Of a DNA stretch of 56,634 nt, positions 2,682-49,873 are shown in pieces. Below the pieces are notes generated by a model that worked only from the letters and a program-made list of their open reading frames with translations, was not told the DNA's origin and ran no database searches. Both the position numbers and the translations under genes were made by a program. Location of the stretch: NCBI GenBank assembly GCA_023334545.1, contig JAADVB010000111.1, positions 1-56,634 on the forward strand, written 5' to 3'. Position 1 is the stretch's first letter. Each line of letters opens with the position of its first letter. The DNA comes from Salisapilia sapeloensis CBS 127946. Taxonomy: Eukaryota > Protista > Oomycota.

Positions 2682-3157
2682 AAAACATAAAGATATAATA
2701 ATAATATTTATACATAGCATTGATAGTGATGTGGTAAAACTGTCAACTTAAACTGGCGAACTGGGATGGAAAATGTTCTCAACGTCTGAGCAAGATTTTG
2801 TTAAAACGACGTGTTCAATAAAGCAACAATTAAAGATATATTTGCTAAATGGAACTAAGATTCGACAACTATGAATATTGATTGAGCATCAATTCATTAT
2901 AATCCAAACTGCAATAGAAGTAGTAGACTTTATTTTCATTTCATCATATATACACTTCCAAAATTGTCGTGTCATTTCCGCTGATATCAACATGCTTAGC
3001 GAGACTGAGTTTAGCCATAAGATGTTTGGAGTAGACCGGAGTAAACTAGTCCGACCATTTGAGCGCTATAAACACCCAAGTAACCGAAAAGCTTTTCATT
3101 GAAAATTTGAGCTCAATGTGCACTCTACGTTGAGTAACAAGTAGTAGTGGGCATCTT

Positions 3158-4151: not shown

Positions 4152-5082
4152 GATCCAAATTCTTTGTTTCCTCATTTAAAAGTGAACATGAGCTTTGTTT
4201 CTTGGAAACGACAAGAAGACGAGGTATTCTAATTGTAAATATATTCACGACATTAAAGGGTATATCGTCATAGTTTGCGAGAAATTTTTCTGCTTCTAAT
4301 TGAATGATAGGCTCGATAGTGTCTGCTTACGGACGACTGACATTTTGGCCAGGTATGATCCGAGAGCTACCTCATTCGAATAGCATTTTGTTCTATGCCC
4401 CTTTACTCAAAAAGCTCAGCATGATGATCAAGAAGCGCGAGTTAGTCTATCGAAACCTTTGTCCAAAGGCATGATTCCAGTGTAATTCGAAGAGATTTCA
4501 AAATATGCTTCAAGGTATGGTACGCGCGAATTAATTGTACTTTTCGTTTCCATTCAATGCTGCTAGACCAATGATATGTCTACGATTTCTATCTGGTCAC
4601 CGCACCAGAAGGCATAGATACATTTAAGGATAGGCCAAATGCACAATGACCTATATATATCACTTCGGCAGAGGTCCATCACCAGAGATGATCCTAGCGT
4701 TGCGAAGATAATTCTACACAAAGACATACGAAAACTACCCGTATCCACTGACTCAGCGCCAACAGGTGTCGTATACTTTAGAATGTAGCTTTCGCTGTAT
4801 AGAGTGCATCCGTCAGTTTACAAATTTTAATGCATGGCTCATAGCTACAATGCATGATGTGTTCAGCAAAAGCCTTTTGATCGTCCTAGTTCGAGTCTTA
4901 CCTAATCTAGACAACATGATCGCATAGCGAGCCACCAGCGACGAACAACAGCCACTATATACCTTTATATAGCAACTTTTCGTTGCAATCCAAGGAGATT
5001 ATCAGGTACTCCCTACAAATGAAATATTGGGCTCCTCTGCCGAGGCTCTCATGCCCGCAGATCACTTTAACACTTTTCACCG

Positions 5083-5775
5083 ATGGGATTCTTCGGACGC
5101 AAAGGCAACCGTGGCGAAGGCAACGGCAATAGCGCCTCATCACATTCTTCCCAGGATGAAGAGTCTGGGTTACTACGTCGAGCAATCGGCTCCGTTAGCT
5201 CGTACACTGGCGGGCATCACCCGATCGTTGGTGCTCGGTCCGTGCTAGCTGACTTCTTTGACTTTATCCAGCAAGGCAATATGATCGACCTTGCCATTGG
5301 TCTCATCCTCGGTCAAGCTTTCCAACGGATCTTGAACTCATTCGTTGTGGACATCTTGACACCGGTCATCAGTCTCTTTTCCGAACGCAGTATTTCCAAT
5401 TACTACTACATTGCTCGCTGTCCAAACAAATCGCCAGGGTGTGATGTCCATACATGGGAGACATGGGATGAAGGTACATTGATTGTCTTTTGTTCCAAGC
5501 TATGAAATCATTCATAAGTACTGACTTGTATTCTAGCGAGAGATGCTGGCGCCGTGACGATCAACTATGGCTTGTTCGCAGAGAACGTGATCAACTTTCT
5601 CATCAACGCTCTCTTCCTCTATGTCACCGTGAAACAGCTCTTCGAGTGGGTCTTTAAGCGTAACATTGTGACCAAGAAACAATGTCAGTATTGCAAGGAA
5701 TTTGTCAAAGGCTCTGCCCTTGTATGCAAGAATTGTGGATCTACGATGCAAAAGCCAGAAGAAAGTCAGAGCTAA
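5083..5775 (+). CDS. mscL: Large-conductance mechanosensitive channel (MscL family) with C-terminal zinc-ribbon motif; join(5083..5473,5537..5775)
   Basis: MscL signature FFDFIQQGNMIDLAIGLILGQAFQRILNSFVVDILTPVI, and after a 63-nt GT-AG intron (5474-5536, branch CTGAC) ARDAGAVTINYGLFAENVINFLINALFLY. The C-terminus has CQYC-x10-CKNC. Confidence 0.92.
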
Positions 5776-6400
5776 GCATCTAACTAGGACAATGTGCTTG
5801 CCATTAAAGTGCTTGTCGTATACCTTTTATGTCGCTTTCAAATGAGATAAGAATTAGAAGCAATAAACTCCATCTTGCATAAATCAGAGTATCTCCATCT
5901 GTATCCATTCTACCATCATGAAAGAGCAAATGCTGATTAAAAGCTTAGCATGCATGTCTTCCCCTATTTGATAGGAAGTAGATGCCACATAGTAACTGGT
6001 ATACAGCTACCACTTACTTAGATAAAAGATACTATGATATCTTTTAACCGTCTTGAACTACACGCCGACCTGTGCAGAAAGTCATATCGTTCTATCGACC
6101 GGCAACCTGTCGTCCGAATGTGGAAAGCATCCTCTAAGAGCTCCTCACTTCTATCTTCTACATCCATGCTAACGCGATATATCCATCCTCCTAAGACACA
6201 CCACTATCACCCTCAATACTACCAACATCAAGTCGCTCAGATGAAATGGATACATCCCTTTGTATCTTTGGATCATTCAACATAGAGCGTATCCTGGGAT
6301 AAATCCCATTCGCATCTAGCGCATCCAGGTACATATCTGACTCCTTTCGAATTTGCACCAATATAATCCTCTAAAACTGATTTTCCGCCAATCGCATCGA

Positions 6401-9400
6401 ATGGGTTCAACCGAGCGAAGACAGCACCCAAGACGTCATTCGCCTAACTGCTGCGGTCCAGGAGGAAGGATGCATCCTGTTCGCGTCAAGATCCTAGCAG
6501 CCAAGGGGCTGCTAGCTGCCGGACCGAATGGCACGAGTGACCCGTATGTCGTCATGAGTCTTTTGAATTCGAAAGATGAGGAGATGACGGAAGGAGGGAC
6601 GTTTAAGACCCAGCCAGCTCGACGGACAGTGAATCCAGAATGGAACGAAGAGTTTGTCATTGGTGATAAGATGGACTTGCGTGGTGCAACCACGTTGCGA
6701 CTCAAGATCATGGATCTCAAGACCGTCCTCGCAGACGAAGTCCTCGGTGTCGTCGACATTCCTGTCCACATCTTTGTCAATCTCGAAGAGACCGTAAGTA
6801 CTAACATCTTATCTTTCTCTTCATAAATCCTAATTACATCTACTCTAGATTGACAATTGGTATCAAGTGACGAAATTCCGATCTATGCGAATGGATGCGA
6901 CGGGAGAGCTGCATGTCGTCTTAGAGAGTGCTGCCAAGGTTCGAAAAGCTAATTTACAAGCTCCGAACATGTTGGTTGTTTCTCTAGAGTCCGGGAATAA
7001 CCTCCTGGCGATGGATGACAATGGTACATCAAGTGATCCGTTCGTGACGTTGACGCTAGGAGATCAAAAGCACCGATCGACAGTGCATAAGAAGACTCTG
7101 AAACCTCATTGGAACGAAAAGTTTGTCTTTGAAGCGAGTTCGAATAAAGAGAAACTTTCGCTACAAGTCGAAGATGAAGACATTACCATCAACGACTTCA
7201 TTGGACGTGCAGACGTCGAGCTCAAGCAGCTCGAACCGCATGTCAAGACACCTATGACGCTTACACTTGGTAATAGCAAGGGTAAGAAGGATAAACTTGA
7301 ACGAGGCACATTAAGTATCTCTCTTCTCTGGACGTTTCACGAAGAAGCTGCGAAACTCGCCAAGAAGAAGGAGACGTCGGTGCTAACGCAGATGATGACA
7401 ACCTTGAATCTCGGTGTACCAGACGCAGATGAAGATGTGTACTCTGGAGAAGACGAGACGGAGGATCAAGGTCGTAATGATAAGCAAAAGGTAATGACGG
7501 ATGAAGAGCGTCGGTTGAAAGAAGAGGAGGAACGCAAGAGACGGGAGGAAGTGTTGAATGAATTGCGTAGTATCGAGGTGAAAAGCGGTGATTACACCAT
7601 CCACGTGCATGTTCTCGAAGCTCGTGACCTTGTCCCAAAGGATGCCACAGGTACATCCGATCCAGTCGTATACGTGACTGTCTTGGATGAAGAGCAGCAG
7701 ACGATGGTCAAGAACCAGACACTCAGTTGCGTCTGGGATGACCTCTTGATCTTCAACATGCGTAATCTCGACAAGTCGGAAGTCGAAATGGGATTCGTCC
7801 GACTTGATGTCATGGACGCGAATACGGTGCAACGTGCTGAGCTCATCGGTAGCGCCCAATTCGACCTTTCGTACATTTACTCGCAACGTAATCACATGCT
7901 CGCAAACGCTTGGTTGGGTCTCACGGACATGGGTAACATGAAGAACAAGGGCATCCAAGGCTACCTCCGAGCATCCATCTCGATCGTCGGTCCTGGTGAC
8001 AAGTTGATTACACCTCCCGATCCATGGGTCTTGGACGACCCGGGCGCGAATCTCGAAGTGCTCATGCCGAAAAGTGTCGAACAAAGCGTCAACTTCGTCG
8101 CCGTGACAGTCCACCGAGCAGAACACTTGCCACCCATGGACGTCAGTGTCCTAGCTTCGAATCGAGGTCTAGACGCTTACGTCGCGGCATCCATTGCAGG
8201 CGAAAGTCCCGTACGGACGCGTGTCAAGTCTCGAAAAGGCGATCGGAAGAAGAACTTGAACGCGAGTTTCCATGAAGACCTCGTCTTGGTAGTGCGTGAA
8301 CCTTCCATGGCTGACAGCATCCACATTGGTGTCTACGATTGGGATAAAGTAGGCGAGAATGAGTCCGTTGGCTTCATCTACCAGAGCGTCAAGGCTGTGA
8401 AAGCCTGTGGTGGTCGCATGGGTCCATTCTGGGCGAACATCTACGGCGGTCCACTCCTTGGTCTAAGCGTTGGGACATCTGTGCTGGATCAAATGAACCG
8501 ACATCCAGAGATGGGGACGACTTATCGCGGTCGTGTCCTCCTCTCTCTTCGTATGCTCGAGAACGAAGATAATGATCGAGAGGAAGTGAATCGAAAGGAG
8601 AATGCTAAGAAACTCCCGAGAGACTTGTACCCCAAGACACGTGTATATCGTATGCGTGCACACTTTGTTCTTGGTAGTGAAATCCCTCGTTTAAATAGTG
8701 CAAAGCACTTGGGACAAAACAGTAAGATGCAACTTGTCATGACGTGCGGATTAGAAGAAATTGCTTCGATTCGTGCGAAGAATAAAAAAGGGGTTGTCGA
8801 ATGGAATACCATGGTCGAAAGTGAAAAGATGATCTGGCCGGAAGATACGTCCCAGATACCAGACATCTTTCTCTACTTGTGTCATGACGTTGGCGGAGAT
8901 CGAAAAAGTATTTGTTTCCAACGTTTCTCCGCGAGAGATTTAATGATGACCATGGGCGGATTCAAAAGTGACGTTCAATGGATATCGATGAAAGAGGACA
9001 ATGCATTGGACGCTTTGAAAGACTCGGTTTTCCCTGGAAACGTCCTCTTGCGAATGGGCTTTGGGACGGATGAAGAGTGGAAGGAGACGGTGTGGGATGA
9101 AAAGGAAGTCGAGACCGTACGTCTACGTCACGCTTATCAACTTCGAGTTCACATTTATCAAGGCAGGCGACTCCCTGCAGCCGATGCGAATGGGCTCTTG
9201 AATCCATACTTGACTGTCCATTGCATGGAGGAAGAGAGTCAGAATAAAAGCATTAAAAAGCAGACGCGAGATCCAGTCTGGTACGAGACACAGTGCTTTG
9301 ATGTGCTCCTACCAGACTTGAAATACGCGCCTCAAGTCTTACTTCGTGTCATGCATTTGGATCCTTTTGTAGATGAATTCATCGGTCGAGCAGCTCTCAA

Positions 9401-37658: not shown

Positions 37659-40099
37659 ATGGAGACCAAGGTCGCGTTCCATGTGCGCAAGTACTTGAAG
37701 GAGAATGATACAGTTCCGACGGAGGAATTTATGACCAAGTACCTCAAGGACACGTATGCCGAGTATCAGCGAAAACCACAGGTATACACGCTAGAGAATA
37801 GCTATCAAATGCAGTGATTAATACGTGGTCCAGGGCCCTCTCAAGACCATGGTACGCAAAGTTTTAAAGAAGCAAGGCAAAGCCAATGGCAACAGGTACA
37901 TTGCAATCCTCCTAGCATCATTTTCAGCCTTTAACGGCACATTCTAGTGCCACAAAACGAACTCGAAGTGAATCATCGGAGGAAGATGAGCGTATGGCCG
38001 CCGAGTTCGAAGCCCAAACAGCTTTATCAGGTGCCTCCAACTCGCTCAACTCTTCCATTCGAGCCAACTACGCTTCCACGACGGAAAAGAATGCTGAATC
38101 AAGCGATACACCGAGTAAAAAGAAAGCTCGTGTTCGCCAACGGTCCGACGATGATTCGCAAAAGAAGAAGCGCGATGCCAAGTCCAAAGACGATGAAGAG
38201 CCAGGCTTTGTCGTCTCTCGTCCGACAGCTCGATACACTGATTTTGGAGGCATCCATACTATCCTACAAGAAGTAAAAGAACTCATCGAGTATCCTCTCA
38301 CGCATCCCGAAGTCTACTCTCACCTCGGTGTCGAGCCTCCTCGTGGCATCCTATTGCATGGCCCGCCTGGTACAGGCAAGTCGATGCTTGCTCATGCTAT
38401 TGCAGGAGAATCAGGAGCCTGCTTCTTCCGTGTATCTGCTCCTGAGATTGTTTCTGGCATGTCTGGTGAGTCCGAACAAAAGGTTCGAGAGCTATTTGAT
38501 GAAGCAGTTTCAAACGCCCCATCCATCATTTTCATCGATGAAATCGATGCGATTGCACCGAAGCGAGAGACGTCTCAACGTGGCATGGAAAAGCGTATCG
38601 TCGCGCAACTACTCACTTCCACAGATTCACTCAGTCTCGAGCGAACAGGAGGCAAACCAGTGGTTGTCATTGGGGCTACAAACCGTCCAGATGCACTTGA
38701 CTCTGCCTTACGTCGTGCAGGTCGTTTTGATCGAGAGATTGGTCTGGGTATTCCAGACGATGTCGCTCGAGAACACATCCTCCGCGTCCTCGCTGCCAAG
38801 ATGACGTTAGAAGGAGACTTTGACTACAAAATGATCGCCAAGAAGACGCCTGGTTTCGTTGGTGCAGACCTCGCATCATTAACCAAAGAGGCGGCTGTAC
38901 TAGCTGTGAATCGCATCTTCTCCACCATCCTTTCGGACAAGAACAAAAGTGAGAAAGATGAAAGCATGGCAGCTGCGGACAATGCGGATGATAGCTCTAC
39001 TGCCGATGGCATTCGATCACAGATAACGCCATTCACACCGGAAGAATTAGCACCACTAAGCATCTCCATGGCAGACTTCCTTGCGGCTGTACCTAAAGTC
39101 CAGCCGAGTTCGAAGCGTGAAGGCTTTGCGACCATCCCAGATGTCTCGTGGAACGACATTGGTGCACTCTCGAGTGTGCGTGATGAGCTCGTCTTGTCGA
39201 TCCTCGAGCCGATCCAACACCCCGAACGCTTCGATGCCTTGGGACTCGACATGCCAGCAGGTGTGCTGCTCTATGGACCGCCTGGATGTGGTAAGACGCT
39301 ACTTGCTAAGGCAATTGCGAACGAAAGTGGCGCCAACTTCATCAGCATCAAAGGGCCTGAGCTACTTGACAAGTACGTCGGTGAGTCGGAGCGTGCTGTT
39401 CGACAAGTATTCCTTCGTGCTCGAGCGTCTTCTCCTTGTGTTGTCTTTTTCGATGAACTCGATGCGCTCTGTCCTCGTCGATCAGATGGTGGTGATTCTG
39501 GTAATGGAGTCAGTGAACGCGTAGTTAATCAGCTATTGACCGAGATGGACGGACTGGACGGACGGAAGAATGTCTTTGTAATTGCGGCTACGAACCGTCC
39601 GGATATGATTGACCCAGCCATGTTGCGTCCTGGCCGACTAGACAAGTTGCTGTACGTGCCGCTACCTGGTGCAGCCGATCGCCTGCAGATCTTGAAGGCG
39701 CAGACGAAGAAGTGTCGAATGGCAGATGACGTTCAATTAGAATCGATTGCTCAAGACCCGAAAGGTGAAGGCTTTAGTGGCGCTGACCTCAGTGCTTTGG
39801 TGCGTGAAGCTGGTATCGCTGCACTTCGTGAAGCAGACCTGTCGACGACGGCGACTGAGGCATTGTTCATCCATCACAGGCACTTTGTACAAGCGTTTGA
39901 GACGGTCTTCCCATCCGTCTCTCGTGCTGACCAACGCATGTTTGATCGTATGAAGAAGAACTTGCGTCGATCCAGAACGACGATGGTGCCGGATGCGACC
40001 GAAAAAGCGGCTGCAGCAGCTAAAGTTGCGGTTGAAACCATCGACAAGAAGGTTCCTGACGATGAAAAGGATAAAAAGGATGAAAAGATGCTGGCGTAG
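37659..40099 (+). CDS. NVL: Nuclear VCP-like AAA+ ATPase (NVL/Rix7, 60S ribosome biogenesis); join(37659..37781,37834..37895,37948..40099)
   Basis: Two AAA domains (GPPGTGKS/IDEIDAI and GPPGCGKT/FDELDAL; second-region RRAGRFDRE and RPGRLDK). The N-terminal VRKYL..YAEYQRK motif is recovered by two 52-nt introns (37782-37833, 37896-37947). Confidence 0.92.
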
Positions 40100-40150: not shown

Positions 40151-43100
40151 CTACCCATGCATGCGTCCATAGCTACGTCCACTTGATGTGATACGAGGTA
40201 TAGACCGTGGACTTCTACCGCTGAGTCTTTTCGAGAAATTAGAGGGATCCAGTAGCAAGCAGAAAGTTTGGATGATAGTGTTCCCCGGTTCTATCGTGCC
40301 ATCCTCTGGAATTGATAGATCAGTATCTTTCAGCAAGTATCGTGCAGCACAAGCCTTGGCACTGCTTATGATCTCCTTAGCTTCGAGCACACTAAGGCTG
40401 TTCAGTTCAGAGAGGAGGAACATCGCAGAGTGATAGATGTAGGTATGCGGTATCTGGTCCTCCACCATCGTTGCAATGTCTATACTAGATCGTCGGCTAC
40501 TAGGTGAATTTTGAAGGGAATCTACCCTACGACTAAGACCTGCTTTTATATGAGGCATCAGAATGTCAACGGCATGCCTCATCGTTGGAACGAAAGGGCT
40601 GGATGGAGCTACTGGCATGATCCAATCTACTTTGTTCATACGACGATGGTTTGGATAGCTTTGGAGCAATTGCTCGTAGTCCTCATGGTCCAGACGGAAG
40701 AGGTCGCAAACTGAAAGAGCTGTACAAGTTTCCTGCCATGGGATACCATAAAGCAGTGGTAATTCACCGAAATGTGCTCCAGATTCCTTCACTTGCTCGG
40801 ATTTTTCATGCCGAACGATGACACGACCACTAGAGATGAAGTACATGACTCGCATGACATCACCTTGGGCTACGATCTCTTCACCATCACTGCAGACAAC
40901 GTAATGCAACTTTAGTAGTAGTGACCGTAGGAAGTAATATTCAAGTGATCGAAAGAGAGTCACTCTCCACGCCAACGTACGGCGCATTGTGTATACTACA
41001 TCCTCACGAAGAACTGGTGAAATGAACTCAGTCGCACTTAGCTTCTCGTCTCCTTGTTGCCTATTCCATATTCGAGCGTAATAGTTCTTTATATGCTGCT
41101 GCATTTTGTCCGGCACGTTGTGCTGGACAAGGTAGTGCTGTATCGCTGCAATACGCTCCTCAAAGCTAGCACGCTGACGCATGAAAATGTCCAACCATTC
41201 GCTTTGTGCACCGATAAGAGACCCGTATACATATATGCCGACGAGGATGAAACCCATTTCGACTGCGGTCTCAACGACATTTAAAGACGTGATATCGCCA
41301 TAGTAGACCATCGAGACCGACTCATACGATACTAGCAACGAACGAAGATACTTTCGACTAAGCGATACAGCACGAAGCCCGGCTACATCAAGATTGATAG
41401 TAAAGAACCCTGGTGGAAGAATGAGCAAGCCAGACGACGATAGCCACGATTTGTCGTAATACTTAAAAGCACTGTCACTGGCAGCATACCAGATACATGC
41501 AATCAAATGGATCATGACATTGTACTTGATGACAGATCGAATGAATCGCAGCGTAGCTTCTGTGATAGGTAACTTGACGTCGTACACGAAGAACTGAAAT
41601 AAAGACTCTGAAAGAGAATCGATTCGTGCAACGTAAAGCAGCTTGTTCAGACGCAAGAAGCTCAAGTACCTTCGTTCGTACGCACTGGGCACATATATAG
41701 CCAATATAGCCAAGTCAAATGGAAACAACGCCGCAAGGTCGTACCAGAACGAAGGATAGATAACCGAGGATACTCTTGCTATAAATCTTCGATACTTGCT
41801 CGACCTATGAAGCAGCGGTGTGGTGTTTATCTGCACATGGCGCTCGTTGCTGTGAAGATGCAGCTTGTACCCAACATCGACAAAGCATGCCAAATCCATC
41901 ATGTATTCACACCAAATCCAAGGAGAAAGTGCATCACTACCCCTTACTTGTAGGTCATTGTCGAAACATACTCTGAATGGATATCCAGTAACCCAGTAAC
42001 AACTAATAATCAGCATAAAAGCTTCCCACATTTTACTCATGTTCAGGATCATTCGCTGAAATCCAAGTAGGAGACGATCACTTTTCTTCCTCTTTGCCAG
42101 GAGATGTAATTTGCTTGCTTGCGCTTTTATCATTGCTCGTGCGCTCCCAGATTTGCTCAAGGGTTTCGAGTCACCGACTGGCAGAACTTTTGAATCAGGA
42201 AGATTTTGTTGGACAGCTAAATTTCTCTTCGAATCTCGGCTTTGACTGCGGCTCGTACTGTGACCAGAGGTCTTAGAAGACATTGATACGCCAACCTTCT
42301 GTCTCCAATTTCGATATATATGATACAAATTTAGTAACTTTGAAAATTGAGGTCGTTGACATTGCTGTAGAACCTCAAAGTTAATACCCACTGTTTCATG
42401 CCTGGCAGCCTCAAGACCACCCGTGACCTTATTCGCAAGCCGCTTATGTTTTTCTTCATCAAACTTGACTAACGAAAAGAATTTTTCATCGAATAGAGGA
42501 AGTGATTTGCTGCGGTGTAGTCTTTGGCGACGGCTCCGAGTAATTTGGCAGGCAAGACTCGCGAGACTAGATCTTCTCCGTTGAACAAAGGGCTCTAAGC
42601 TGCCTGAATTAAGCTCATTTGTACCATTTGCTCCATCCTGGTTTGTTTTACGACTGTCAAGTACGTTAGTGACACTAGTTGCCTCACTGAACATGTTGCG
42701 AGGCGTTGGCAGCGTATCTTTTGGAGGTAAGTCGTTGGTTACCAATGCTATCGAACTCATCCTATTTAACGCTTGACTGTCATCAATGCTTATTATGCGC
42801 TGATGTGCAACGGGGGATGCTTGCAGTTGCTGTATACTGTCTTGGCAAAGACCAGACATCCTTCGTCCATTTCTGAGAGGCGCTTTTTGCGCTAATACTT
42901 TAGCTATTTGCTGGTTGTGCGCTTCCATAGAGTCCGTGATTTCCTTGAGTTTTTTGTCTACCGCAAACTCGACGGCGGCCAAGTACGTGGCTCGTCGCCA
43001 GCATTCCTTTTGCAGCAGCTCTAGGTTTTGACTGGTCATATGGATGCGGATGTAGCGACTGACAGGATTTACTTGTGACATCATTTCACGATATAGATCG

Positions 43101-46100
43101 GCATTCGAATCTTCTTCTTCGCACGCCGTTTGACGCATCGACGGTGCTAGTTTAGCTGCACCGTTGCGAGTAGTACTTCGTGATGACCGCTGCTTTAGCA
43201 CATTACCTACATCTTGTCTACCAAAGCTTCTAAGCTGCATCCATAATGCTGTCTCGCTTAAAGCTTTATTCACAGCCTGGTCATATTGATTCTGGAAGAC
43301 GTCGAGCTTTTGAAGCATGTACTTGGCTTTACATTTCAGCATTACCGCTTCTGGCGTAGCAAACAAAGAGGATGATTTATTCCTGCTAGCAAAAGTGCCT
43401 TTTGACCCTCCTCGAATAACGGACATGGCGGACGCAAATTTCTTAGTACCGAGGCGTTGAGGTTGTTCCTTTTTAGGGCGTGCCGTATTTACAGTTTTGG
43501 AATCTGCCGTGGGTTCTCCAATAACGGGGACAAGCATGTTTTGTGTTGCCAAGTGTCGCATCGCTTTACAAGCAACAGCTATACAGCGTTCACGGTACCG
43601 ATGCAGTCGATTACGTAACCACTGATAGATCGAATGCAATGCATCCCGATGCTTCTGCACTTCACCAAAATCGCCTGTGGACACAGTCCACAGTTCGTTC
43701 CAATCCTGTTTGGAAACATGAAGCACCTCACAAGGTTGAATTGCCTTCACTGTCGCTAGACGACGATGAGACGGAAGAAAGAAAGCCACTTCTCCAAATA
43801 CACAGCCCTCAAGTAGCACAGCAACATTTGTGGTCGATTCACTCCAGAATACGGCGGCAGCACCCTTCCGAAGGATACATAGTTGGCGACCTTGAGCCTC
43901 CTCTGTCAAAATACTGTCCCCAGCTACAAACAGCTCAGACCGGAGCTTCAAAGCCAAGTTATCAATCTGGGAGTATGACAGATACTGAGCGATCGGCATC
44001 TTCATCAACGAGGTGCCGTAGATTTCTTTTGCAAATTGTAATCGCAGATTCGTATTCAATTCTTTTAAAATGTCTTCCATCTGATGTCCATGCGAATGTG
44101 CAAAGTCCATCTTTAAATAGGCTCCCACACGGCCTCGAATTGTCGTGGACAACCCGTTCTCCTTTGCAAAATGCTCGAAATTGACAATCCGATCCTTATA
44201 TTCTTTTTCCTCTCGGTTTAAATTAATAACCAAATCCGAGAACTCACCGATGATGTAACCCATGAAAAACGTACAACAAATGCACGTGAGTGTCGCCCAT
44301 AATGTACCGAGCGTATCCCTCGGTACAATATCCTTTGAACCCACAAGTGTCAGTGTTGTCATAGCCCAGTAAATGGATCTCATGTACAGCCATAGAACAG
44401 AAAATTTGTTTTCTAGTATGAACGTATCTTGGTTCATCCAGCAATTGCTTCGATTCGAGCACTCTTGCTCTGAAATCCAGTAGAAGACACAACCGGTAAA
44501 ATGAGCTCCGAGAAGAAAAAATATGAGGAGTTTAACCGGACTCAGATATGGTGCTACACTACGTGATGGAAACCGTTGCTGAATTTGAACAATGACTTCA
44601 TCTAGCTGCGTCCAAAGAACCCTACAACGAACAAGTCGTGTTAGACGACAGATCTCTGCTGCTCGCACGTTATTGTAAAATATCCAATTAATTGGAACTA
44701 TCCCAAGGAGGTCTAGCTTGAATTCTTTGCTTTTGAAATAGCACCGGTTCATTTCCTCTCTAGTAATAAGGTTGTCCATACCGACTTCCTCACCGCAGCC
44801 AAAGTAAAACAATTTTAAATAAATATCTGTCGTAAATGCAACGTCAGATGCAATCGACAATGAGAGCAACAGCAGTAACTCCTCACCCAAACCATTAACT
44901 GTTATAATAGACGCGAAAGAGATGCAGAAGATGATGGCCCAAGCGTTGTAAATGTTAAACAGAGTCAAAGCCATTGTCCAGAAGCTTTGGAAAGCTCGCT
45001 TCATGTCCCGCAGATCCCTTAAGCTCGGAGCATGTATGGTACCGATGGTATGTGAGCCTTGCTCGCGTTGAAAGAACAAAGTCGAAGTGGCGAGTGCATG
45101 CGGCTTTAGCTTCGCTTTCTCCAGATTCTTTTCAATATTTTTCAAAGTCATCATATCGTCATGCCATTCCTCGCCTGCAATCTCTTTCATGTCTCGTACG
45201 TCATCTGCGTACTTCCGTCGAATGTTTTCAAATAAATCTCTCGTCATAACCGAAGCACTGATAGGTGACATGGCAATTAACGTCACAGGACTCGGCAAGA
45301 GCAGTAAGAACTCACTTACACCGAAACAATCACCATCATGAAATGCACGCACTGGCGCTCTTCGTGGTTGGGAGAAAGCATCCACTTTTCCCCTCTTGAT
45401 AATGAAAAATTCGTGACAGAGACTTCCTTTCAAGTACATCGTTTCCCCGACTTGATACAACCGATTGCGGAATTTACCTGTCACCTCATTCAGAAACTCT
45501 ACACTAGCAGAGTCAAAGAGTGGAACTTGTCTAGCAGCTTTTGAATGCGATTGTGTAGAAATTTGATAGCAAAGCTGTTCTGGAAGATGAGACAGTAATT
45601 GAGACTCATATAACTCCGCGCGCTGCATGTATTTGCTATAGTAGAATCGACGAATGTCTGCTTGTAGCTTTTGCGAAATACCCCAATGCGCCATGCTACC
45701 ATTGAGTGTGTTTATTCGCTCCACATGCTCTCGCTGGCCGGATGTGAGATTGGAAATTGTCGTTGACATCGCACCGACGACACCAAAATTAATGACACCT
45801 CCAACAAATATCCATATTGCCGCAAATATCGTTTCCGATGTTGAATACGCAAGTATATCTCCATATCCTACACTTGTGAGTGCAACGACAGCCCAGTAGA
45901 TTGAGCGTAAGAAGGCAAAGCTCGCCGTATATGGTGATGCTGGATCTATATTCGGAAGCACATGACCAAGCTGCCCGTAGGAGTCAAAAAGTACCCAGGA
46001 GCAGTTGTGATACATCTTTGCCATTTCGAGACAATCATGACGATTGAGAGAATGAAGAGTGCCATAGTCGATGTTATGAGCGTCAATCCATGCTGCTTCA

Positions 46101-48505
46101 AACCAAAGACATGCTGCAAAGTGAATGGTAAGTGCTACCCCAAGGAACAGTGACACAATCCATTGGACACGAGAGCTTAGACTATATGTTTCAGCGACAT
46201 TTTCGGTCAAATCAAAGAAGTGCCGGAATCGTATCAATCGAATTAGACGCAACATAGAGAAGTATTCTTTCCAAGGGACGTTGACCGTATCGATGATCCA
46301 AATTACTGGTAACGAGGCAAGCAGGTCCAAATAGAAACCTTGCGCTTTGTACGCTGCAAAGATCATTGCTGGATCTTCGACAATAATCATCACACGTTCC
46401 TCTAGGTAGCTGAAAACGCGAGATCGAAGGAATAAGTCGAGCAAAAAGAAGATTTCAGCACAGGTTGTTAATGCGTACCCTGCTCCATGAACACGAGCAC
46501 TAATAAAGGGCGACTCGGTGTTAAAGCTTGAAACGAAAATGATATTGTAAGGTACTTCGAAGGCGACATAGATGATTAGCACGAATCGTAATAGCTCCCA
46601 CCGTTCGCGAAAAGTGGACGTGGGGTGAAACCAAGGTGTAGCGGACGATTGTCGATTATTCCCCTCTTTCTTTCCTAGGTGGAAAATCGCAGCACGAAAT
46701 GAACTCCCTCTCCTGTTTTTATCCGATGTACCTAGTAATTTTTTCATCTTCCGCTGTTGTGCTTCGTGCTTTTCAAACACCGTTTTCATTTCTTCTAGGA
46801 CTTCCGCTTCATGCCCACGATAGAAAGACTTTAGCACATTATTAAATTTATTTTGATGCAGTGCGTAGAGTTCACAAAAGGATTTAGCAATGGCATACTC
46901 ATTCGAGTACTCGGTACCAAGGAGGGCTCCAGCAGAAAAGTAGTCTCCTTTCGTGCATTCTTTCGCCCCAAGGCTGTCGGAGATCACTTGAACAGAGCCA
47001 CGTGTAATAAAACACGCTCGAATATTAATATTCGGCTCTGCAATCACGTCGTTTGGCGTGTATACGTGATTTATCAGCTCGAGCACGAGTAAATTAATGA
47101 ACTCGACACTCTCTTTTGCTAGAAATGGAATTTGCTGCAAAGGAGTTGCCTTGAGGTAATACAAAATATGCGACTGAAAGTGCCTCGGGAGTTTATGCAA
47201 TGAAGCCTCACTGTCCAAACCTTGGTGTGTAACCCAGGTATAGCTAAAGTAAGCGGTAACTTTACGTCGGAGTGCACGTGGTAGGTTCTGGGACTTCATG
47301 TATGCACGTGCGTTGTCGACATGCGCTGTAAAGTCTACGTACGCAGCATTTCGGTGGCGAAAGATGAACAGAAATGTTGCTATGATGATACTACTTACCA
47401 TAGACCCGACAAATTGGGCAAAGATAGCGAACAATGTTTCGGCATTTGATATTGGTGTAACGTCGTCATATCCTAACGATACAATCGTTCGTGCGGCCCA
47501 GTACATGGCTCGAGCATACTTCCGAAGGACGGTAGCATCCTGAAGGCGATCTCGAATCGCCCAACTAGATTCGTAATCTTCACCACACAAGGAAATGTCG
47601 ACACCGCACGATTCATGTGCTATCAGCATGTATCCACACGCACACCAGTGGCAAAGTATGAGGGCACTCGCGATGGCAAGAACTAACGTCGCGTTACCAG
47701 TCCTTGAGATGGTGTGGACCAAGTGTCGGTGTGCTAGTGTTTTTGAAAGTTGCCGAAGACAGCTTCGTAGGCGCCCGATACGAAGGAGCTTGTTTAATCG
47801 TAGAATGTGAACCGTCTTGTAAGTCGGCGTGAGTAAAGCAAATAGTTCAAGAGGTAACATGGCAATGACATCCAGACCGATGCGAAATTGACGTTGACCA
47901 GATCTCCTTTTCGTTTCTTGCAGCGACGTAAATGCAGAGCTTTGAGCCTCAGGTAGCGTTTCTGATGCAACAGAGGCTTTCAAATTCTGCACCGTCCACT
48001 TAGTGGCGTTTGACCGGTGTCGCCGAGAAATAGATGAGCTTCGCGAGGTTGGCGATGACGAGCCAGAGTGACGCTTTACTACATTCCACTTCGATTGCAC
48101 TGATATTTTACGATATATTGCTAGTCGTTGATGTGGTTCAAAGACGAAGACGGCAAAATCAATGAGTCCTACAATGTCTGCTAGTACATCAAGTGTCGTG
48201 AAAACTGTGAGCTCTGGTGACCAGTCTGAATTCGTGGCATGATGCGGGTCGTAGAAAAATCCTAGTCGCAACGGAACGCTTATTGCAATGTAGATGACTG
48301 AGAGCAATACTGCACCTCCACTCAAGACGGATCGAGTGGTAGGATCGACTCGTCGATACTGATCATACACTACCTTAACGATCACCTTCCATACTTTCCT
48401 ACCTTTAGACAAAGCCATTCCATCTACCTTTCCAGTAGCTGGAGCCGAAGCTGGAGGTTCATGGTCATCGGCAGCGGCAAAGACCTTCAACTTGGTGCGT
48501 TGCAT
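40151..48505 (-). CDS. Four-repeat (6TM + pore + C-linker + CNBD)x4 cyclic-nucleotide-gated-type cation channel, CNGK-like, ~2780 aa
   Basis: One intronless frame. Four S4-like segments (LRLNKLLRIGR, LRLIRLIRFR, CRLTRLVRCR, LRLNKLLYVAR), four pore loops (SLGYDD, SVGYGD, LVGSKD, MVYYGD) and four cNMP-binding-domain folds. First ATG at 48505. Confidence 0.9.
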   Translation of the reverse strand: MQRTKLKVFAAADDHEPPASAPATGKVDGMALSKGRKVWKVIVKVVYDQYRRVDPTTRSVLSGGAVLLSVIYIAISVPLRLGFFYDPHHATNSDWSPELTVFTTLDVLADIVGLIDFAVFVFEPHQRLAIYRKISVQSKWNVVKRHSGSSSPTSRSSSISRRHRSNATKWTVQNLKASVASETLPEAQSSAFTSLQETKRRSGQRQFRIGLDVIAMLPLELFALLTPTYKTVHILRLNKLLRIGRLRSCLRQLSKTLAHRHLVHTISRTGNATLVLAIASALILCHWCACGYMLIAHESCGVDISLCGEDYESSWAIRDRLQDATVLRKYARAMYWAARTIVSLGYDDVTPISNAETLFAIFAQFVGSMVSSIIIATFLFIFRHRNAAYVDFTAHVDNARAYMKSQNLPRALRRKVTAYFSYTWVTHQGLDSEASLHKLPRHFQSHILYYLKATPLQQIPFLAKESVEFINLLVLELINHVYTPNDVIAEPNINIRACFITRGSVQVISDSLGAKECTKGDYFSAGALLGTEYSNEYAIAKSFCELYALHQNKFNNVLKSFYRGHEAEVLEEMKTVFEKHEAQQRKMKKLLGTSDKNRRGSSFRAAIFHLGKKEGNNRQSSATPWFHPTSTFRERWELLRFVLIIYVAFEVPYNIIFVSSFNTESPFISARVHGAGYALTTCAEIFFLLDLFLRSRVFSYLEERVMIIVEDPAMIFAAYKAQGFYLDLLASLPVIWIIDTVNVPWKEYFSMLRLIRLIRFRHFFDLTENVAETYSLSSRVQWIVSLFLGVALTIHFAACLWFEAAWIDAHNIDYGTLHSLNRHDCLEMAKMYHNCSWVLFDSYGQLGHVLPNIDPASPYTASFAFLRSIYWAVVALTSVGYGDILAYSTSETIFAAIWIFVGGVINFGVVGAMSTTISNLTSGQREHVERINTLNGSMAHWGISQKLQADIRRFYYSKYMQRAELYESQLLSHLPEQLCYQISTQSHSKAARQVPLFDSASVEFLNEVTGKFRNRLYQVGETMYLKGSLCHEFFIIKRGKVDAFSQPRRAPVRAFHDGDCFGVSEFLLLLPSPVTLIAMSPISASVMTRDLFENIRRKYADDVRDMKEIAGEEWHDDMMTLKNIEKNLEKAKLKPHALATSTLFFQREQGSHTIGTIHAPSLRDLRDMKRAFQSFWTMALTLFNIYNAWAIIFCISFASIITVNGLGEELLLLLSLSIASDVAFTTDIYLKLFYFGCGEEVGMDNLITREEMNRCYFKSKEFKLDLLGIVPINWIFYNNVRAAEICRLTRLVRCRVLWTQLDEVIVQIQQRFPSRSVAPYLSPVKLLIFFLLGAHFTGCVFYWISEQECSNRSNCWMNQDTFILENKFSVLWLYMRSIYWAMTTLTLVGSKDIVPRDTLGTLWATLTCICCTFFMGYIIGEFSDLVINLNREEKEYKDRIVNFEHFAKENGLSTTIRGRVGAYLKMDFAHSHGHQMEDILKELNTNLRLQFAKEIYGTSLMKMPIAQYLSYSQIDNLALKLRSELFVAGDSILTEEAQGRQLCILRKGAAAVFWSESTTNVAVLLEGCVFGEVAFFLPSHRRLATVKAIQPCEVLHVSKQDWNELWTVSTGDFGEVQKHRDALHSIYQWLRNRLHRYRERCIAVACKAMRHLATQNMLVPVIGEPTADSKTVNTARPKKEQPQRLGTKKFASAMSVIRGGSKGTFASRNKSSSLFATPEAVMLKCKAKYMLQKLDVFQNQYDQAVNKALSETALWMQLRSFGRQDVGNVLKQRSSRSTTRNGAAKLAPSMRQTACEEEDSNADLYREMMSQVNPVSRYIRIHMTSQNLELLQKECWRRATYLAAVEFAVDKKLKEITDSMEAHNQQIAKVLAQKAPLRNGRRMSGLCQDSIQQLQASPVAHQRIISIDDSQALNRMSSIALVTNDLPPKDTLPTPRNMFSEATSVTNVLDSRKTNQDGANGTNELNSGSLEPFVQRRRSSLASLACQITRSRRQRLHRSKSLPLFDEKFFSLVKFDEEKHKRLANKVTGGLEAARHETVGINFEVLQQCQRPQFSKLLNLYHIYRNWRQKVGVSMSSKTSGHSTSRSQSRDSKRNLAVQQNLPDSKVLPVGDSKPLSKSGSARAMIKAQASKLHLLAKRKKSDRLLLGFQRMILNMSKMWEAFMLIISCYWVTGYPFRVCFDNDLQVRGSDALSPWIWCEYMMDLACFVDVGYKLHLHSNERHVQINTTPLLHRSSKYRRFIARVSSVIYPSFWYDLAALFPFDLAILAIYVPSAYERRYLSFLRLNKLLYVARIDSLSESLFQFFVYDVKLPITEATLRFIRSVIKYNVMIHLIACIWYAASDSAFKYYDKSWLSSSGLLILPPGFFTINLDVAGLRAVSLSRKYLRSLLVSYESVSMVYYGDITSLNVVETAVEMGFILVGIYVYGSLIGAQSEWLDIFMRQRASFEERIAAIQHYLVQHNVPDKMQQHIKNYYARIWNRQQGDEKLSATEFISPVLREDVVYTMRRTLAWRVTLFRSLEYYFLRSLLLKLHYVVCSDGEEIVAQGDVMRVMYFISSGRVIVRHEKSEQVKESGAHFGELPLLYGIPWQETCTALSVCDLFRLDHEDYEQLLQSYPNHRRMNKVDWIMPVAPSSPFVPTMRHAVDILMPHIKAGLSRRVDSLQNSPSSRRSSIDIATMVEDQIPHTYIYHSAMFLLSELNSLSVLEAKEIISSAKACAARYLLKDTDLSIPEDGTIEPGNTIIQTFCLLLDPSNFSKRLSGRSPRSIPRITSSGRSYGRMHG

Positions 48506-48700
48506 GGTCGTACAAGTAGCTTGTATTTTCGTCTTTACGGGTGAAGAAATGTAACGACGGAGGTGCAAGGAAGCTATAAATATTTCCTTGCATCAACCCC
48601 GAGCAAGTAGATCCTTTCGTCAAGCTCAATTTTCTCGGATGAAACGACTATGAACGCACGTAAAGATCCTGTCCGACAATGTGAAGACTATATTGCATTG

Positions 48701-49873
48701 CTAAAAGTCATCAAACACGTCAAACGCTGCTTTGTCTTCTCCAAAGAGCGCAGGTGTGTTATCTAGTGGTGAATCCGGGTACTCATCAAAATTATGATGA
48801 TCGCCGGGTCCAGAGACAGGAGGAATGAATGGCGCTGGCACCATCCGATGCAAGACGGCGTCCCAATCCACTTTCTTAAAGTATTTATGTTTCTTCACAT
48901 CCTCTGCGCCGCCACGAAGACACCCGAGTCGCTTGGTTCGATCGGACGCGAGAAGCTTTTTAATCAAATCCTTTGCGTGGCTATCGAAATGCTTTGGATA
49001 GTCCACTTTGCCATTTAAAATCTTTTGATAGATACCGAACGGGTTCTCGTCGTAAAAAGGAGGGTACCCAGCGAGCATCTCGAACAAGAGGATGCCAAGT
49101 GCCCACCAATCGACACTTTTGCCATGCCCACGACTTTGAATAATCTCCGGTGCGAGGTACTCGGGCGTCCCACAAAGTGTCCATGTCCGGTCTTCGACGA
49201 TTTTCGCGAACCCAAAGTCCGTGATTTTAATCGACCCGTCGGCTGTGATGAGCAGATTCTCTGGCTTGAGATCCCGATAGATGATGTGTTGGCTATGGAG
49301 GTACGAGATGGCAAGAATGAGCTGTGTGATGTAGTAACTCGCGACGGCGTCTGGAAACCTCCCTTGGCGTCTCAAATATGAGAACAACTCCCCGCCTTGG
49401 ACGTAATCCAACACCAAGTAAAGCTTCTTTTCGTCTTGGAACTGGCCTAAGAAGTCGACGATGAACGGATGCTGTATCTTGCTTAAAATCTCTACTTCGC
49501 ATTTGATATGATGCAACTGCTGCAATCGCAGTATCTCGCTCTTCTTGAGGATCTTGAGCGCATGAAAAGCGCCGGTCGCGCGAGACCGTACGAGCCGTAC
49601 ACGACCGAACGTGCCAGTGCCTACGTCATACAAAGCGTCAGCGCAATGCATCTTGAAACGTTGTGGTGTACAGGCTCACCGAGTGTCGCGAGGAGCTCAA
49701 AGTCGTCGAGCGAATACTTCATCCGCTGCTCCGATGCACCTGTGACAACGTCTGGTAAGGAGAGTACTTCTTTCGGTGGCTCCTATGATAGATAGAGTCT
49801 CAGATGAGACACGAGGGAGAGGGAAATGGCGTGTACGTACCTTGGTTTCTGGCATCGTCTTCCGTCCAAACAT
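48701..49873 (-). CDS. PKA-C: cAMP-dependent protein kinase catalytic subunit; complement(join(48701..49620,49680..49782,49841..49873))
   Basis: Introns 49783-49840 and 49621-49679 give MFGRKTMPETK|EPPK..DDFELLATLG|TGTFGRV. Motifs: YRDLKPEN, DFGFAK, RTWTLCGTPEYLAPE, VDWWALG, and a C-terminal FDDF hydrophobic motif typical of PKA. Confidence 0.93.

What the first reader, a model, noticed from the sequence alone, without database searches (positions are those of the whole stretch)
40151..48505. Single-chain four-repeat CNG-type channel where only repeat III keeps an intact cyclic-nucleotide-binding cassette
Seen: four tandem 6TM-pore-CNBD units. The phosphate-binding cassette (consensus GxxFGExxL...RxAxV) is complete only in repeat III (GCVFGEVAFFLPSHRRLATVKA, ~43742-43807). 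Repeat I (GDYFSAGALL..EYAIA) and II (GDCFGVSEFL..PVTLIA) lack both FGE and the Arg; repeat IV has FGE but no Arg (GAHFGELPLL..WQETCTA). Established (from memory, needs verifying): sea-urchin sperm CNGK is a four-repeat channel reported to be opened by nucleotide binding at repeat 3 alone, driving chemotactic signalling. Inference: an oomycete channel with the same one-ligand logic could serve as a high-sensitivity chemotaxis sensor in zoospores. The residue after the Arg is Leu rather than the Thr of cGMP-preferring CNBDs, hinting at cAMP or non-selective binding.
Basis: partly seen in the sequence, partly recalled or inferred. Interest (0 to 1): 0.8.

Follow-up and report, generated by a model that had tools for sequence, protein, structure and literature searches.

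The report
Four-repeat oomycete cyclic-nucleotide channel
This is a real, intact gene for a giant ion channel made of four chained channel subunits; it belongs to a little-described stramenopile channel family that arose separately from the sea-urchin sperm channel CNGK, and in this organism only the third subunit keeps a complete cyclic-nucleotide binding site.

Summary
Window 40151-48505 (minus strand) is one uninterrupted 2,784-codon ORF with four Ion_trans and four cNMP_binding domains. The Gly-Glu...Arg phosphate-binding cassette is complete only in repeat III (E1572, R1582). Repeats I and II lack both residues. Repeat IV keeps FGE but has Trp2590 where SthK and HCN4 have the Arg. RNA-library contigs from a separate study carry the same TGG codon.

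- **Not a CNGK orthologue.** In a tree of single repeats, all 20 holozoan CNGK repeats form one clade (98/96). Joining repeat III of this family with CNGK repeat 3 is rejected (AU p about 1e-8). The four-repeat design looks convergent.
- **"Only repeat III" is specific to this lineage.** Across about 73 Phytophthora, Pythium, Globisporangium and Albugo relatives, repeat III is intact in 69 of 69 scorable cases. Repeat IV is intact in 58 of 62, and its Arg was lost separately here, in Albugo and in one Phytophthora paralogue. Repeats I and II are never canonical, yet they are as conserved as III and IV.
- **The pore is asymmetric.** The four filters (GYDD, GYGD, GSKD, YYGD) differ, and the pattern is conserved in the closer oomycete relatives, so K+ selectivity as in CNGK is unlikely.

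Cyclic-nucleotide gating, ligand preference and a zoospore role remain untested. The other stage-one notes found for this stretch concern its pore filters and its PKA neighbour.

The parts
40151..48505 (-). Complete coding sequence of the four-repeat CNBD channel: 2,784 aa plus the stop at 40151-40153, with no introns
   Evidence: ORF listing and translation. Pfam finds 4x Ion_trans and 4x cNMP_binding. Orthologues align over 96-99% of the length. No joints appear in RNA-library contigs across 40151-46000.
46754..48322 (-). Repeat I (res 62-584): S1-S6, pore, C-linker and a degenerate CNBD
   Evidence: Unit HMM envelope. cNMP_binding scores 25.7 bits, below the cutoff.
47462..47479 (-). Pore filter I, SLGYDD (res 343-348)
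   Evidence: LGY[DSN]D is conserved in group A orthologues.
46883..46948 (-). Cassette I, GDYFSAGALLGTEYSNEYAIAK (res 520-541): no Gly-Glu and no Arg
   Evidence: It is never canonical in about 65 relatives (FAD/FAE, with Y or F at the Arg column).
45140..46603 (-). Repeat II (res 635-1122): S1-S6, the only canonical GYGD pore loop, C-linker and a degenerate CNBD
   Evidence: cNMP_binding scores 33.8 bits.
45857..45874 (-). Pore filter II, SVGYGD (res 878-883)
45266..45334 (-). Cassette II, GDCFGVSEFLLLLPSPVTLIAMS (res 1058-1080): Glu replaced by Val, and Ser at the Arg column of the unit-profile alignment (Val by eye)
   Evidence: Relatives have YGV/FGV with H, Y or C at the Arg column.
43622..44983 (-). 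Repeat III (res 1175-1628): S1-S6, a divergent pore loop, C-linker and a canonical CNBD
   Evidence: cNMP_binding scores 50.3 bits. E 5e-14 to the SthK CNBD.
44330..44347 (-). Pore filter III, LVGSKD (res 1387-1392), with Lys where K+ channels have the second Gly
   Evidence: VGS[RKN][ED] is conserved in groups A and B.
43742..43807 (-). Cassette III, GCVFGEVAFFLPSHRRLATVKA (res 1567-1588): complete, with E1572 and R1582
   Evidence: Aligned to SthK FGEMALILRAP-RTATVRA. FGE..R is present in 69 of 69 scorable relatives.
41936..43615 (-). III-IV linker of about 560 aa (res 1631-2190): no Pfam family, poorly conserved, rich in Ser, Leu, Arg and Lys, with four [RK][RK]x[ST] motifs
   Evidence: no family. 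(24-30% identity to orthologues; motifs at residues 1837, 1881, 1976 and 2139).
40592..42031 (-). Repeat IV (HMM envelope res 2159-2638): S1-S6, pore loop, C-linker, and a CNBD well conserved apart from its cassette
   Evidence: cNMP_binding scores 48.6 bits. E 1e-18 to the SthK and HCN4 CNBDs.
41294..41311 (-). Pore filter IV, MVYYGD (res 2399-2404), with Tyr where K+ channels have the first Gly
   Evidence: [FYW]YGD is conserved in relatives.
40718..40780 (-). Cassette IV, GAHFGELPLLYGIPWQETCTA (res 2576-2596): Gly-Glu kept, Arg replaced by Trp2590 (TGG, 40736-40738), and Pro2583 in the cassette helix
   Evidence: The same letters appear in RNA-library contigs. Relatives have [FI]GE..R in 58 of 62. 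Neither the Trp nor the Pro is seen in any of them.

Best explanation
**What is shown.** The gene encodes a pseudo-tetrameric cation channel of the CNBD-channel superfamily: four different 6TM-pore-C-linker-CNBD modules in one chain. It belongs to a stramenopile four-repeat family found in Peronosporales, Pythiales, Albugo, Saprolegniales and Platysulcus, plus many unnamed environmental sequences. Each of the four repeats has its own orthologue clade across these taxa, so the chain is old. The family is separate from holozoan CNGK, whose four repeats duplicated independently.

The four modules are specialised:
- CNBDs I and II have lost the ribose-binding Glu and the phosphate-binding Arg in all closer relatives, yet they are as strongly conserved as III and IV.
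- CNBD III keeps a complete cassette in every closer relative examined.
- CNBD IV is usually complete but has lost its Arg several times. In this organism it carries Arg to Trp plus a Pro in the cassette helix.

**What is inferred.** In this organism the channel has one canonical high-affinity cyclic-nucleotide site, in repeat III. Ligand binding there, passed through the ring of four C-linkers, opens or modulates the pore. CNBDs I, II and IV then act as ligand-independent parts of the gating ring, much like the KCNH homology domains. The non-canonical four-way filter argues for a channel that is not strictly K+-selective. A role in spore or zoospore signalling is plausible but rests only on general data from relatives.
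For: - **Architecture and intactness:**
- **Cassette states, fixed by alignment to solved CNBDs:**
- **The Trp codon is real:**
- **Family pattern:** '--++' in 30 of 67 four-unit proteins, including all Phytophthora, Pythium, Globisporangium and group B Albugo rows of that table; the window is the only '--+e'.
- **Wider survey:** III is FGE..R in 69 of 69. IV is intact in 58 of 62, with exceptions in Albugo laibachii (Ser), A. candida (FGA..Ser) and one P. fragariaefolia paralogue (His).
- **Losses look independent:** the window protein branches at the base of group A and is not sister to Albugo.
- **Degenerate CNBDs are constrained:** C-linker plus CNBD identity between P0001 and P0007 is 75, 70, 67 and 61% for I to IV. 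The window's repeat IV is not specifically accelerated.
- **Repeat-by-repeat clades across stramenopiles:** STR_r2 100/98 and STR_r3 95/90, with all CNGK units together at 98/96. The AU test gives p 1.2e-8.
- **Taxon names:**
- **Asymmetric filter conserved in groups A and B:**
- **Likely transcribed:** RNA libraries hold 0.30-0.53 of the gene's sampled words against 0.13-0.15 for an ORF-poor control stretch.
- **Precedent:** one functional CNBD suffices in a four-repeat channel (PMC4749565, PMC7024835).
Against: - No functional data exist for any member of this family.
- Zebrafish CNGK has canonical-looking CNBDs yet is gated by pH and not by cyclic nucleotides (PMC4749565). An intact cassette therefore does not prove ligand gating.
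- Some family members have no canonical cassette at all, for example Lagenidium P0079 '----' and P0093. The scaffold can evidently work without cNMP binding.
- All four S4 segments keep three or four basic residues (read by eye from the translation), so voltage gating is possible.
- Arg to Trp is predicted to weaken binding. That prediction rests on general knowledge of Arg mutants in HCN, CNG and PKA and was not measured here.
- The independent-origin inference could be mimicked by concerted evolution among CNGK repeats.
- No single-repeat outgroup could be added, because the word-based search returned almost none.
- The RNA evidence is low-depth assembled contigs, and the life stage is unknown.
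Confidence: 0.6

Rival explanations
1. The channel is gated mainly by voltage, pH or another signal. All four CNBDs, including III, would then be structural parts of the gating ring, and cyclic nucleotides would have little or no effect. This is how KCNH channels and zebrafish CNGK behave.
For: - Zebrafish CNGK has canonical-looking CNBDs but is gated by alkalinisation (PMC4749565).
- Family members exist with no canonical cassette (P0079, P0093, P0151).
- Degenerate CNBDs I and II are conserved as strongly as III and IV, which shows a ligand-independent role for the fold.
- S4 segments keep their basic residues (by eye).
Against: Gly-Glu...Arg in repeat III is retained in 69 of 69 closer relatives over deep divergence. 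That is hard to explain if the pocket binds nothing. Repeat III and IV CNBDs score about twice as high against the cNMP_binding model as I and II.
Confidence: 0.25
2. The channel still works with two ligands. Repeat IV would still bind a cyclic nucleotide or a related ligand despite Trp2590, with the indole replacing the Arg contact or changing ligand preference. The 'single intact site' would then be only apparent.
For: - CNBD IV is the best-scoring CNBD against SthK and HCN4 (E 1e-18).
- It is not specifically accelerated in this lineage.
- Gly-Glu is kept.
Against: - The cassette carries two substitutions found in none of 62 relatives: Arg to Trp and Ala to Pro in the cassette helix.
- From general knowledge, replacing the cassette Arg in HCN2, CNGA1 and PKA lowers affinity by orders of magnitude.
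- Independent Arg losses in Albugo, with the Glu also lost in A. candida, suggest the site is dispensable rather than retuned.
Confidence: 0.12
3. The gene is a decaying copy, or an assembly or annotation artefact, with no function.
For: - It sits on a long branch in the gene tree (end branch 1.21).
- RNA depth is low.
Against: - The ORF runs 2,784 codons without a stop.
- All four units match the family profile end to end.
- Transmembrane and CNBD regions are 40-55% identical to orthologues, against 24-31% in the linkers.
- RNA-library contigs from another study match exactly.
Confidence: 0.02

Closest known systems
Holozoan CNGK (tetraKCNG): sea-urchin ApCNGK, zebrafish DrCNGK, choanoflagellate SrCNGK
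   Same: Four 6TM-pore-C-linker-CNBD repeats in one polypeptide. In ApCNGK, functional asymmetry among the CNBDs lets a single ligand at one repeat, the third, open the channel (PMC4749565, PMC7024835).
   Different: - **Not orthologous.** CNGK repeats form their own clade (98/96), and joining the two families' third repeats is rejected.
- **Pore.** CNGK has GYG or GFG in all four repeats and is K+-selective. Here only repeat II has GYGD.
- **Symmetry.** CNGK is described as pseudo-symmetric, with short uniform linkers and no domain specialisation (PMC6259924). This family has a linker of about 560 aa between III and IV, two permanently degenerate CNBDs and four different filters.
[quoted passage not shown] 2020, PMC7576140)
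   Same: Chained CNBD-channel repeats in SAR protists. Each repeat position forms its own clade, which points to co-evolution and specialisation of the repeats.
   Different: Those have two repeats and TVGYG-like filters. That survey used P. infestans XP_002907851.1 and not the four-repeat gene XP_002895936.1, and it reported four-repeat CNBD channels only in holozoa. How the two-repeat genes relate to this family was not tested here.
KCNH (EAG/ERG) cyclic-nucleotide-binding homology domains
   Same: A CNBD fold is retained under constraint without the canonical cassette residues and without cNMP binding. That matches what the sequence suggests for CNBDs I and II, and here for IV.
   Different: KCNH channels are homotetramers in which all four domains are degenerate and are filled by an intrinsic ligand. 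Whether CNBDs I and II have an intrinsic ligand was not tested.
Heterotetrameric CNG channels (CNGA/CNGB) and four-domain Nav/Cav channels
   Same: A fixed arrangement of four non-equivalent pore-lining modules, with an asymmetric selectivity filter. As in the Nav DEKA ring, the basic residue sits in module III.
   Different: There is no sequence relationship beyond the voltage-gated-like superfamily. The Lys in filter III is a positional analogy only, and selectivity is untested.

Membership tests
CNBD-channel superfamily (HCN/CNG/KCNH/CNGK-like) | 6TM voltage-sensor-plus-pore module (Ion_trans) | tested here: met
   There are four Ion_trans stretches, whole-protein E 9.5e-32. Per repeat the scores are 41.8, 34.8, 41.9 and 21.4 bits; repeat IV is below the 25-bit cutoff on its own.
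CNBD-channel superfamily (HCN/CNG/KCNH/CNGK-like) | C-terminal cyclic-nucleotide-binding domain after each pore module | tested here: met
   There are four cNMP_binding stretches. Full-length matches run from S1 to the end of the CNBD of CNGA1, CNGA3, SKOR and TAX-4 type structures.
Canonical cNMP-binding site (phosphate-binding cassette) | Gly-Glu of FGE and the cassette Arg both present | tested here: met
   Met for repeat III only: E1572 and R1582, aligned to the SthK cassette. Not met for I (FSA..S), II (FGV..S) or IV (FGE..W).
Canonical cNMP-binding site (phosphate-binding cassette) | Actual binding of cAMP or cGMP and its coupling to gating | not testable with these tools
   This needs binding assays and electrophysiology.
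Holozoan CNGK | Four 6TM-CNBD repeats in one chain | tested here: met
Holozoan CNGK | Repeats fall inside the CNGK clade, or pair repeat by repeat with CNGK repeats 1-4 | tested here: not met
   The 20 units of fish CNGK (P0136), a nemertean (P0108) and three related unnamed proteins form one clade at 98/96 that excludes all units of this family. The AU test rejects repeat III plus CNGK repeat 3 as a clade, p 1.2e-8.
Holozoan CNGK | GYG or GFG K+ filter in all four repeats | tested here: not met
   The filters are SLGYDD, SVGYGD, LVGSKD and MVYYGD. CNGK-clade proteins show G[YF]GD in all four.
Holozoan CNGK | Opening by one cGMP at the third CNBD with nanomolar sensitivity | not testable with these tools
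   Only the sequence prerequisite, one canonical cassette in repeat III, is seen here.
Stramenopile four-repeat CNBD channel family (unnamed) | Each repeat groups with the same-numbered repeat of oomycete and Platysulcus proteins | tested here: met
   Q_r1 to Q_r4 each sit in starred clades made only of same-numbered repeats. STR_r2 is 100/98 and STR_r3 is 95/90. STR_r1 and STR_r4 need two changes on the best tree, although the starred branches do not rule out one.
Stramenopile four-repeat CNBD channel family (unnamed) | Group A signature: filters GY[DSN]D, GYGD, GS[RKN][ED], [FYW]YGD; cassettes I and II degenerate and III complete | tested here: met
   The window departs only in cassette IV. 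It is the basal branch of group A.

The most novel reading that the evidence does not exclude
Oomycetes and other stramenopiles carry a second, independently evolved pseudo-tetrameric CNBD channel. Unlike CNGK, it has become fully asymmetric in pore, CNBDs and linkers, in the way Nav and Cav channels have. Within it, repeat III is the obligatory ligand sensor. In this early-branching lineage, and independently in Albugo, the channel has been pared down to a single binding site. That would converge on the one-molecule gating of sea-urchin sperm CNGK and could give flagellate spores near single-molecule sensitivity to a cyclic nucleotide.
Probability: 0.25. Interest if true: 0.8.

Novelty: new variant of a known kind. 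Interest (0 to 1): 0.58.

Why it matters
Four-repeat CNBD channels have been described only in animals and choanoflagellates. A broad 2020 survey found only two-repeat tandems in oomycetes (PMC7576140). A 2018 review states that among 4x6TM channels only the Nav, Cav and NALCN lineage became asymmetric (PMC6259924). This gene and its many unnamed relatives suggest a second origin of the four-repeat CNBD design, and one that did become strongly and stably asymmetric.

The natural series of two-site proteins (most oomycetes), one-site proteins (this organism, Albugo) and zero-site proteins (one Lagenidium paralogue) makes a useful test set. It can address how many liganded CNBDs a tetrameric gating ring needs.

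The family is absent from plants and land vertebrates, and it is multi-copy in Phytophthora. If it controls zoospore behaviour it could be a selective target. That step is speculative.

Tried and rejected
1. **Single-repeat outgroups.** A profile search with an alignment of single repeats returned only seven hits, so the repeat tree has no single-repeat outgroup.
2. **Stage-specific expression of the Phytophthora orthologues.** The supplements held for PMC5322657 contained none of the search terms. PPTG_06812 is not in the held supplements of the zoospore membrane proteome PMC12223298. Neither result shows absence.
3. **Link to flagellum loss.** The paper on flagellar gene decay in Hyaloperonospora (PMC3471859) does not mention channels or cyclic nucleotides. 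No downy-mildew name appears among 86 homologues of the P. nicotianae protein, but the search filters by length and shared words, so this is only a hint.
4. **Conserved pairing with the PKA gene.** The PKA catalytic gene lies directly upstream here. In Globisporangium polare the channel's neighbours differ, and the nearest kinase is about 7 kb away on the other strand. I do not treat this as a conserved gene pair.
5. **ESM Atlas look-up.** It confirmed only the general family.
6. **Pseudogene or assembly-error reading of Trp2590.** Rejected on the evidence.
7. **Not attempted.** Structure prediction was not run, because sequence matches to solved CNBDs were already unambiguous and pocket geometry cannot be inspected with these tools. 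The organism's species name and the life stage of the RNA samples are coded and could not be recovered.
Full report
**1. What is at the coordinates**

The minus strand of window 40151-48568 is a single open reading frame. Its first ATG is at 48505, giving 2,784 codons before the stop at 40151-40153. Pfam finds four Ion_trans and four cNMP_binding stretches. The protein matches solved CNG, HCN, KCNH, SthK and plant Shaker-like channel structures from S1 to the end of the CNBD.

Scored repeat by repeat, the cNMP_binding scores are 25.7 bits (I, below the 27.5 cutoff), 33.8 (II), 50.3 (III) and 48.6 (IV). A stretch of about 560 aa between repeats III and IV, and the 144-aa C-terminal tail, match no family. 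The four repeats are only 18-23% identical to each other, so the internal duplications are ancient.

**2. The cassettes**

- HMMER alignment of the repeat III CNBD to SthK places FGEVAFFLPSHRRLATVKA on FGEMALILRAP-RTATVRA. E1572 and R1582 are therefore the ribose and phosphate contacts.
- The repeat IV CNBD is the best match of all to SthK and HCN4 (E about 1e-18). Its Trp2590 falls on the cassette Arg.
- In a profile alignment of all units the states are FSA..S, FGV..S, FGE..R and FGE..W for I to IV.
- My column assignment reproduces a published detail. The fish CNGK P0136 has Ala at the Arg column of repeat 2, as PMC4749565 reports for the zebrafish channel.
- The Trp codon is TGG at 40736-40738. 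Contigs assembled from three RNA libraries of a 2019 study of the same organism cover it and cassette III without any difference, and no splice joints appear.
- Those RNA libraries hold 0.30-0.53 of the gene's sampled words, against 0.13-0.15 for an ORF-poor control stretch. This favours real, low-level transcription, but the life stage is unknown.

**3. Relatives**

The closest proteins are only 39-41% identical. They come from Globisporangium, Phytophthora and unnamed assemblies. A second paralogue group (B, 31-32%) and more distant groups also exist. These include Albugo, Lagenidium, Aphanomyces stellatus, Achlya hypogyna and the deep-branching stramenopile Platysulcus tardus.

An exhaustive HMMER search with repeats II and III found 207 proteins at E below 1e-30, many of them longer than 2,000 aa. 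With a unit profile built here, 94 of the 197 proteins then held parse into exactly four units. In Phytophthora the group A genes are multi-copy and lie in tandem arrays; P. lilii has five on one contig.

In a gene tree the window protein is the basal, long branch of group A. It sits outside Albugo plus Pythium, Globisporangium and Phytophthora.

**4. Is it a CNGK?**

I cut 25 four-unit proteins into 100 units and built an IQ-TREE tree (LG+C20 PMSF, 427 columns).

- The 20 units of the CNGK clade form one clade with 98/96 support. That clade is anchored by a cyprinid protein named 'cyclic nucleotide-gated potassium channel' and by a nemertean protein.
- The stramenopile-type units sort by repeat number. 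STR_r2 is 100/98 and STR_r3 is 95/90. Each window repeat lies in a starred clade made only of same-numbered repeats.
- Forcing this family's repeat III and CNGK repeat 3 into one clade costs 123.5 log-likelihood units (AU p 1.2e-8).
- Two further small groups (P0024 with P0150, and P0132) also have their four repeats clustering together, which hints at yet more independent chainings.

The four-repeat architecture is therefore old within stramenopiles, and it is not inherited in common with CNGK.

Three caveats apply. No single-repeat outgroup could be obtained. Concerted evolution among CNGK repeats would give the same picture.

**5. How general is 'only repeat III'?**

In the first table of 67 complete four-unit proteins the commonest pattern is '--++', in 30 proteins. 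That covers all Phytophthora, Pythium, Globisporangium and group B Albugo rows of the table. The window is the only '--+e'.

A larger survey covered about 73 group A and B proteins.

| Repeat | State of the cassette |
|---|---|
| I | never canonical (FAD/FAE, with Y or F at the Arg column) |
| II | never canonical (YGV/FGV, with H, Y or C at the Arg column) |
| III | FGE..R in 69 of 69 scorable units |
| IV | [FI]GE..R in 58 of 62 |

The repeat IV exceptions are Albugo laibachii group A (Ser), A. candida group A (FGA..Ser), one P. fragariaefolia paralogue (His) and one distant Albugo laibachii protein (P0282, FGA..R), scored from its only assignable unit. The window has Trp plus a Pro in the cassette helix, and neither residue is seen in any relative. 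Because the window protein is not sister to Albugo and the replacing residues differ, the losses look independent.

CNBDs I and II are not decaying. Their C-linker-plus-CNBD identity between Globisporangium-type and Phytophthora proteins is 75% and 70%, above III (67%) and IV (61%). The window's repeat IV is not specifically accelerated.

In more distant groups the pattern shifts. Aphanomyces stellatus is '-ee+', Achlya is '-eer', Lagenidium P0079 is '----', and several unnamed proteins are '-+++'.

The picture is a hierarchy:
- repeat I is almost always degenerate;
- repeat III is invariant in the peronosporalean groups;
- repeat IV is usually intact but can be dispensed with.

This supports the idea that repeat III is the key sensor in groups A and B. 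It does not support a conserved single-ligand design.

**6. Pore and other asymmetries**

The four filters are SLGYDD, SVGYGD, LVGSKD and MVYYGD. The pattern GY[DSN]D, GYGD, GS[RKN][ED], [FYW]YGD is conserved in group A. Group B shares it in repeats II to IV and has G[YF][YS]D in repeat I. More distant members have other non-canonical repeat III filters, such as VVVVIGD and TVVCFGD.

Only repeat II has the K+ channel signature. A basic residue sits in filter III, and an aromatic residue replaces the first Gly in filter IV. By inference, the channel is not a strictly K+-selective pore like CNGK.

The III-IV linker is long, poorly conserved and carries four [RK][RK]x[ST] motifs. This degree of domain specialisation contrasts with the published description of CNGK as pseudo-symmetric and unspecialised (PMC6259924).

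**7. Mechanism**

*Shown:* the architecture, the cassette states, their conservation pattern, family membership and independence from CNGK.

*Inferred:* repeat III binds a cyclic nucleotide and drives or modulates gating through the C-linker ring. Repeat IV has lost high-affinity binding here. CNBDs I and II act as ligand-independent ring elements. Selectivity is not K+-specific.

The ApCNGK precedent shows that one liganded CNBD can open a four-repeat channel (PMC4749565; PMC7024835, KD 26 nM). The zebrafish orthologue shows that canonical-looking CNBDs can nevertheless be ligand-insensitive, and this is the main rival reading. Ligand preference cannot be read from Leu1583, because that position is I, L or T in relatives.

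*Context only:* P. infestans CNG-type and cyclic-nucleotide genes are reported as spore-induced (PMC5322657). P. parasitica zoospores carry voltage-sensor-cyclase fusion proteins (PMC12223298). Neither paper names this family.

**8. Novelty**

The proteins are in public databases as hypothetical, 'VIC superfamily' or 'cGMP-gated cation channel alpha-1' entries. In the searchable literature I found no description of four-repeat CNBD channels outside holozoa. The broad survey PMC7576140 reports only two-repeat tandems in oomycetes. It used a different P. infestans accession (XP_002907851.1) from the four-repeat gene identified here. Only two papers mention both CNGK and oomycetes.

I rate this a new variant of a known kind: a convergent, strongly asymmetric pseudo-tetrameric CNBD channel. 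The specific 'single intact cassette' is a lineage-specific state within it.

**9. Verdict**

- The object is real, and it is more interesting at the family level than for the feature originally flagged.
- Function remains untested.
- Other stage-one notes cover this stretch: one on the asymmetric filter and one on the PKA neighbour. I checked the first against orthologues and the second only in part.

Noticed in passing
window 48701-49651 (-): The gene directly upstream of the channel is a clear PKA catalytic-subunit homologue: E about 1e-109 to mammalian PKA C-alpha, with the next family, SGK1, at 1e-79. It lies on the same strand, about 195 bp from the channel's ATG. In Globisporangium polare (L001) the channel's neighbours differ, and the nearest kinase gene is about 7 kb away on the opposite strand. 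The pairing does not look conserved.
   Followed up: partly
window 37994-40099 (+): A 701-aa protein with two AAA ATPase domains (CDC48/NSF-like class) converges on the channel gene. Only about 50 bp separate the two stop codons.
   Followed up: no
P0226, P0240, P0243, P0046, P0262 (one P. lilii contig of 96,363 bp); Pythium oligandrum Poli38472_011913/011915/011918: Group A four-repeat channel genes are multi-copy and arranged in tandem arrays in Phytophthora and Pythium. The 4,070-aa Pythium oligandrum model P0261 contains eight units, so it is probably two adjacent genes merged by annotation.
   Followed up: partly
P0024/P0150 and P0132 (unnamed Logan and JGI proteins, about 2,100-2,200 aa): Two further four-repeat CNBD channel groups have four repeats that cluster with each other and not with CNGK or the stramenopile family. 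They may be additional independent chainings. Their taxa are unknown.
   Followed up: partly
P0022 (JGI metagenome, 3,590 aa): The first, flawed unit profile suggested about six 6TM-CNBD units in one predicted protein. The four that aligned with the window's repeats have canonical G[YF]GD filters. This is either a longer chain or a merged gene model.
   Followed up: no
window 44544: One RNA-library contig (run X3) reads G where the genome has A, 31 letters from the contig end. It could be an allele, RNA editing or an assembly end effect.
   Followed up: no
window 41936-43615 (-), residues 1631-2190: The III-IV linker of about 560 aa has no recognisable domain. It carries four basic-basic-x-Ser/Thr motifs (residues 1837, 1881, 1976, 2139) and two short islands conserved in group A, near residues 1722 and 2039-2057. 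These may be regulatory phosphorylation or docking sites.
   Followed up: partly
window 1-6800: This stretch is AT-richer (39-43% GC) and has no ORF of 200 aa or more, yet RNA libraries hold about 0.13-0.15 of its sampled words. It may hold a small or intron-rich transcribed gene.
   Followed up: no
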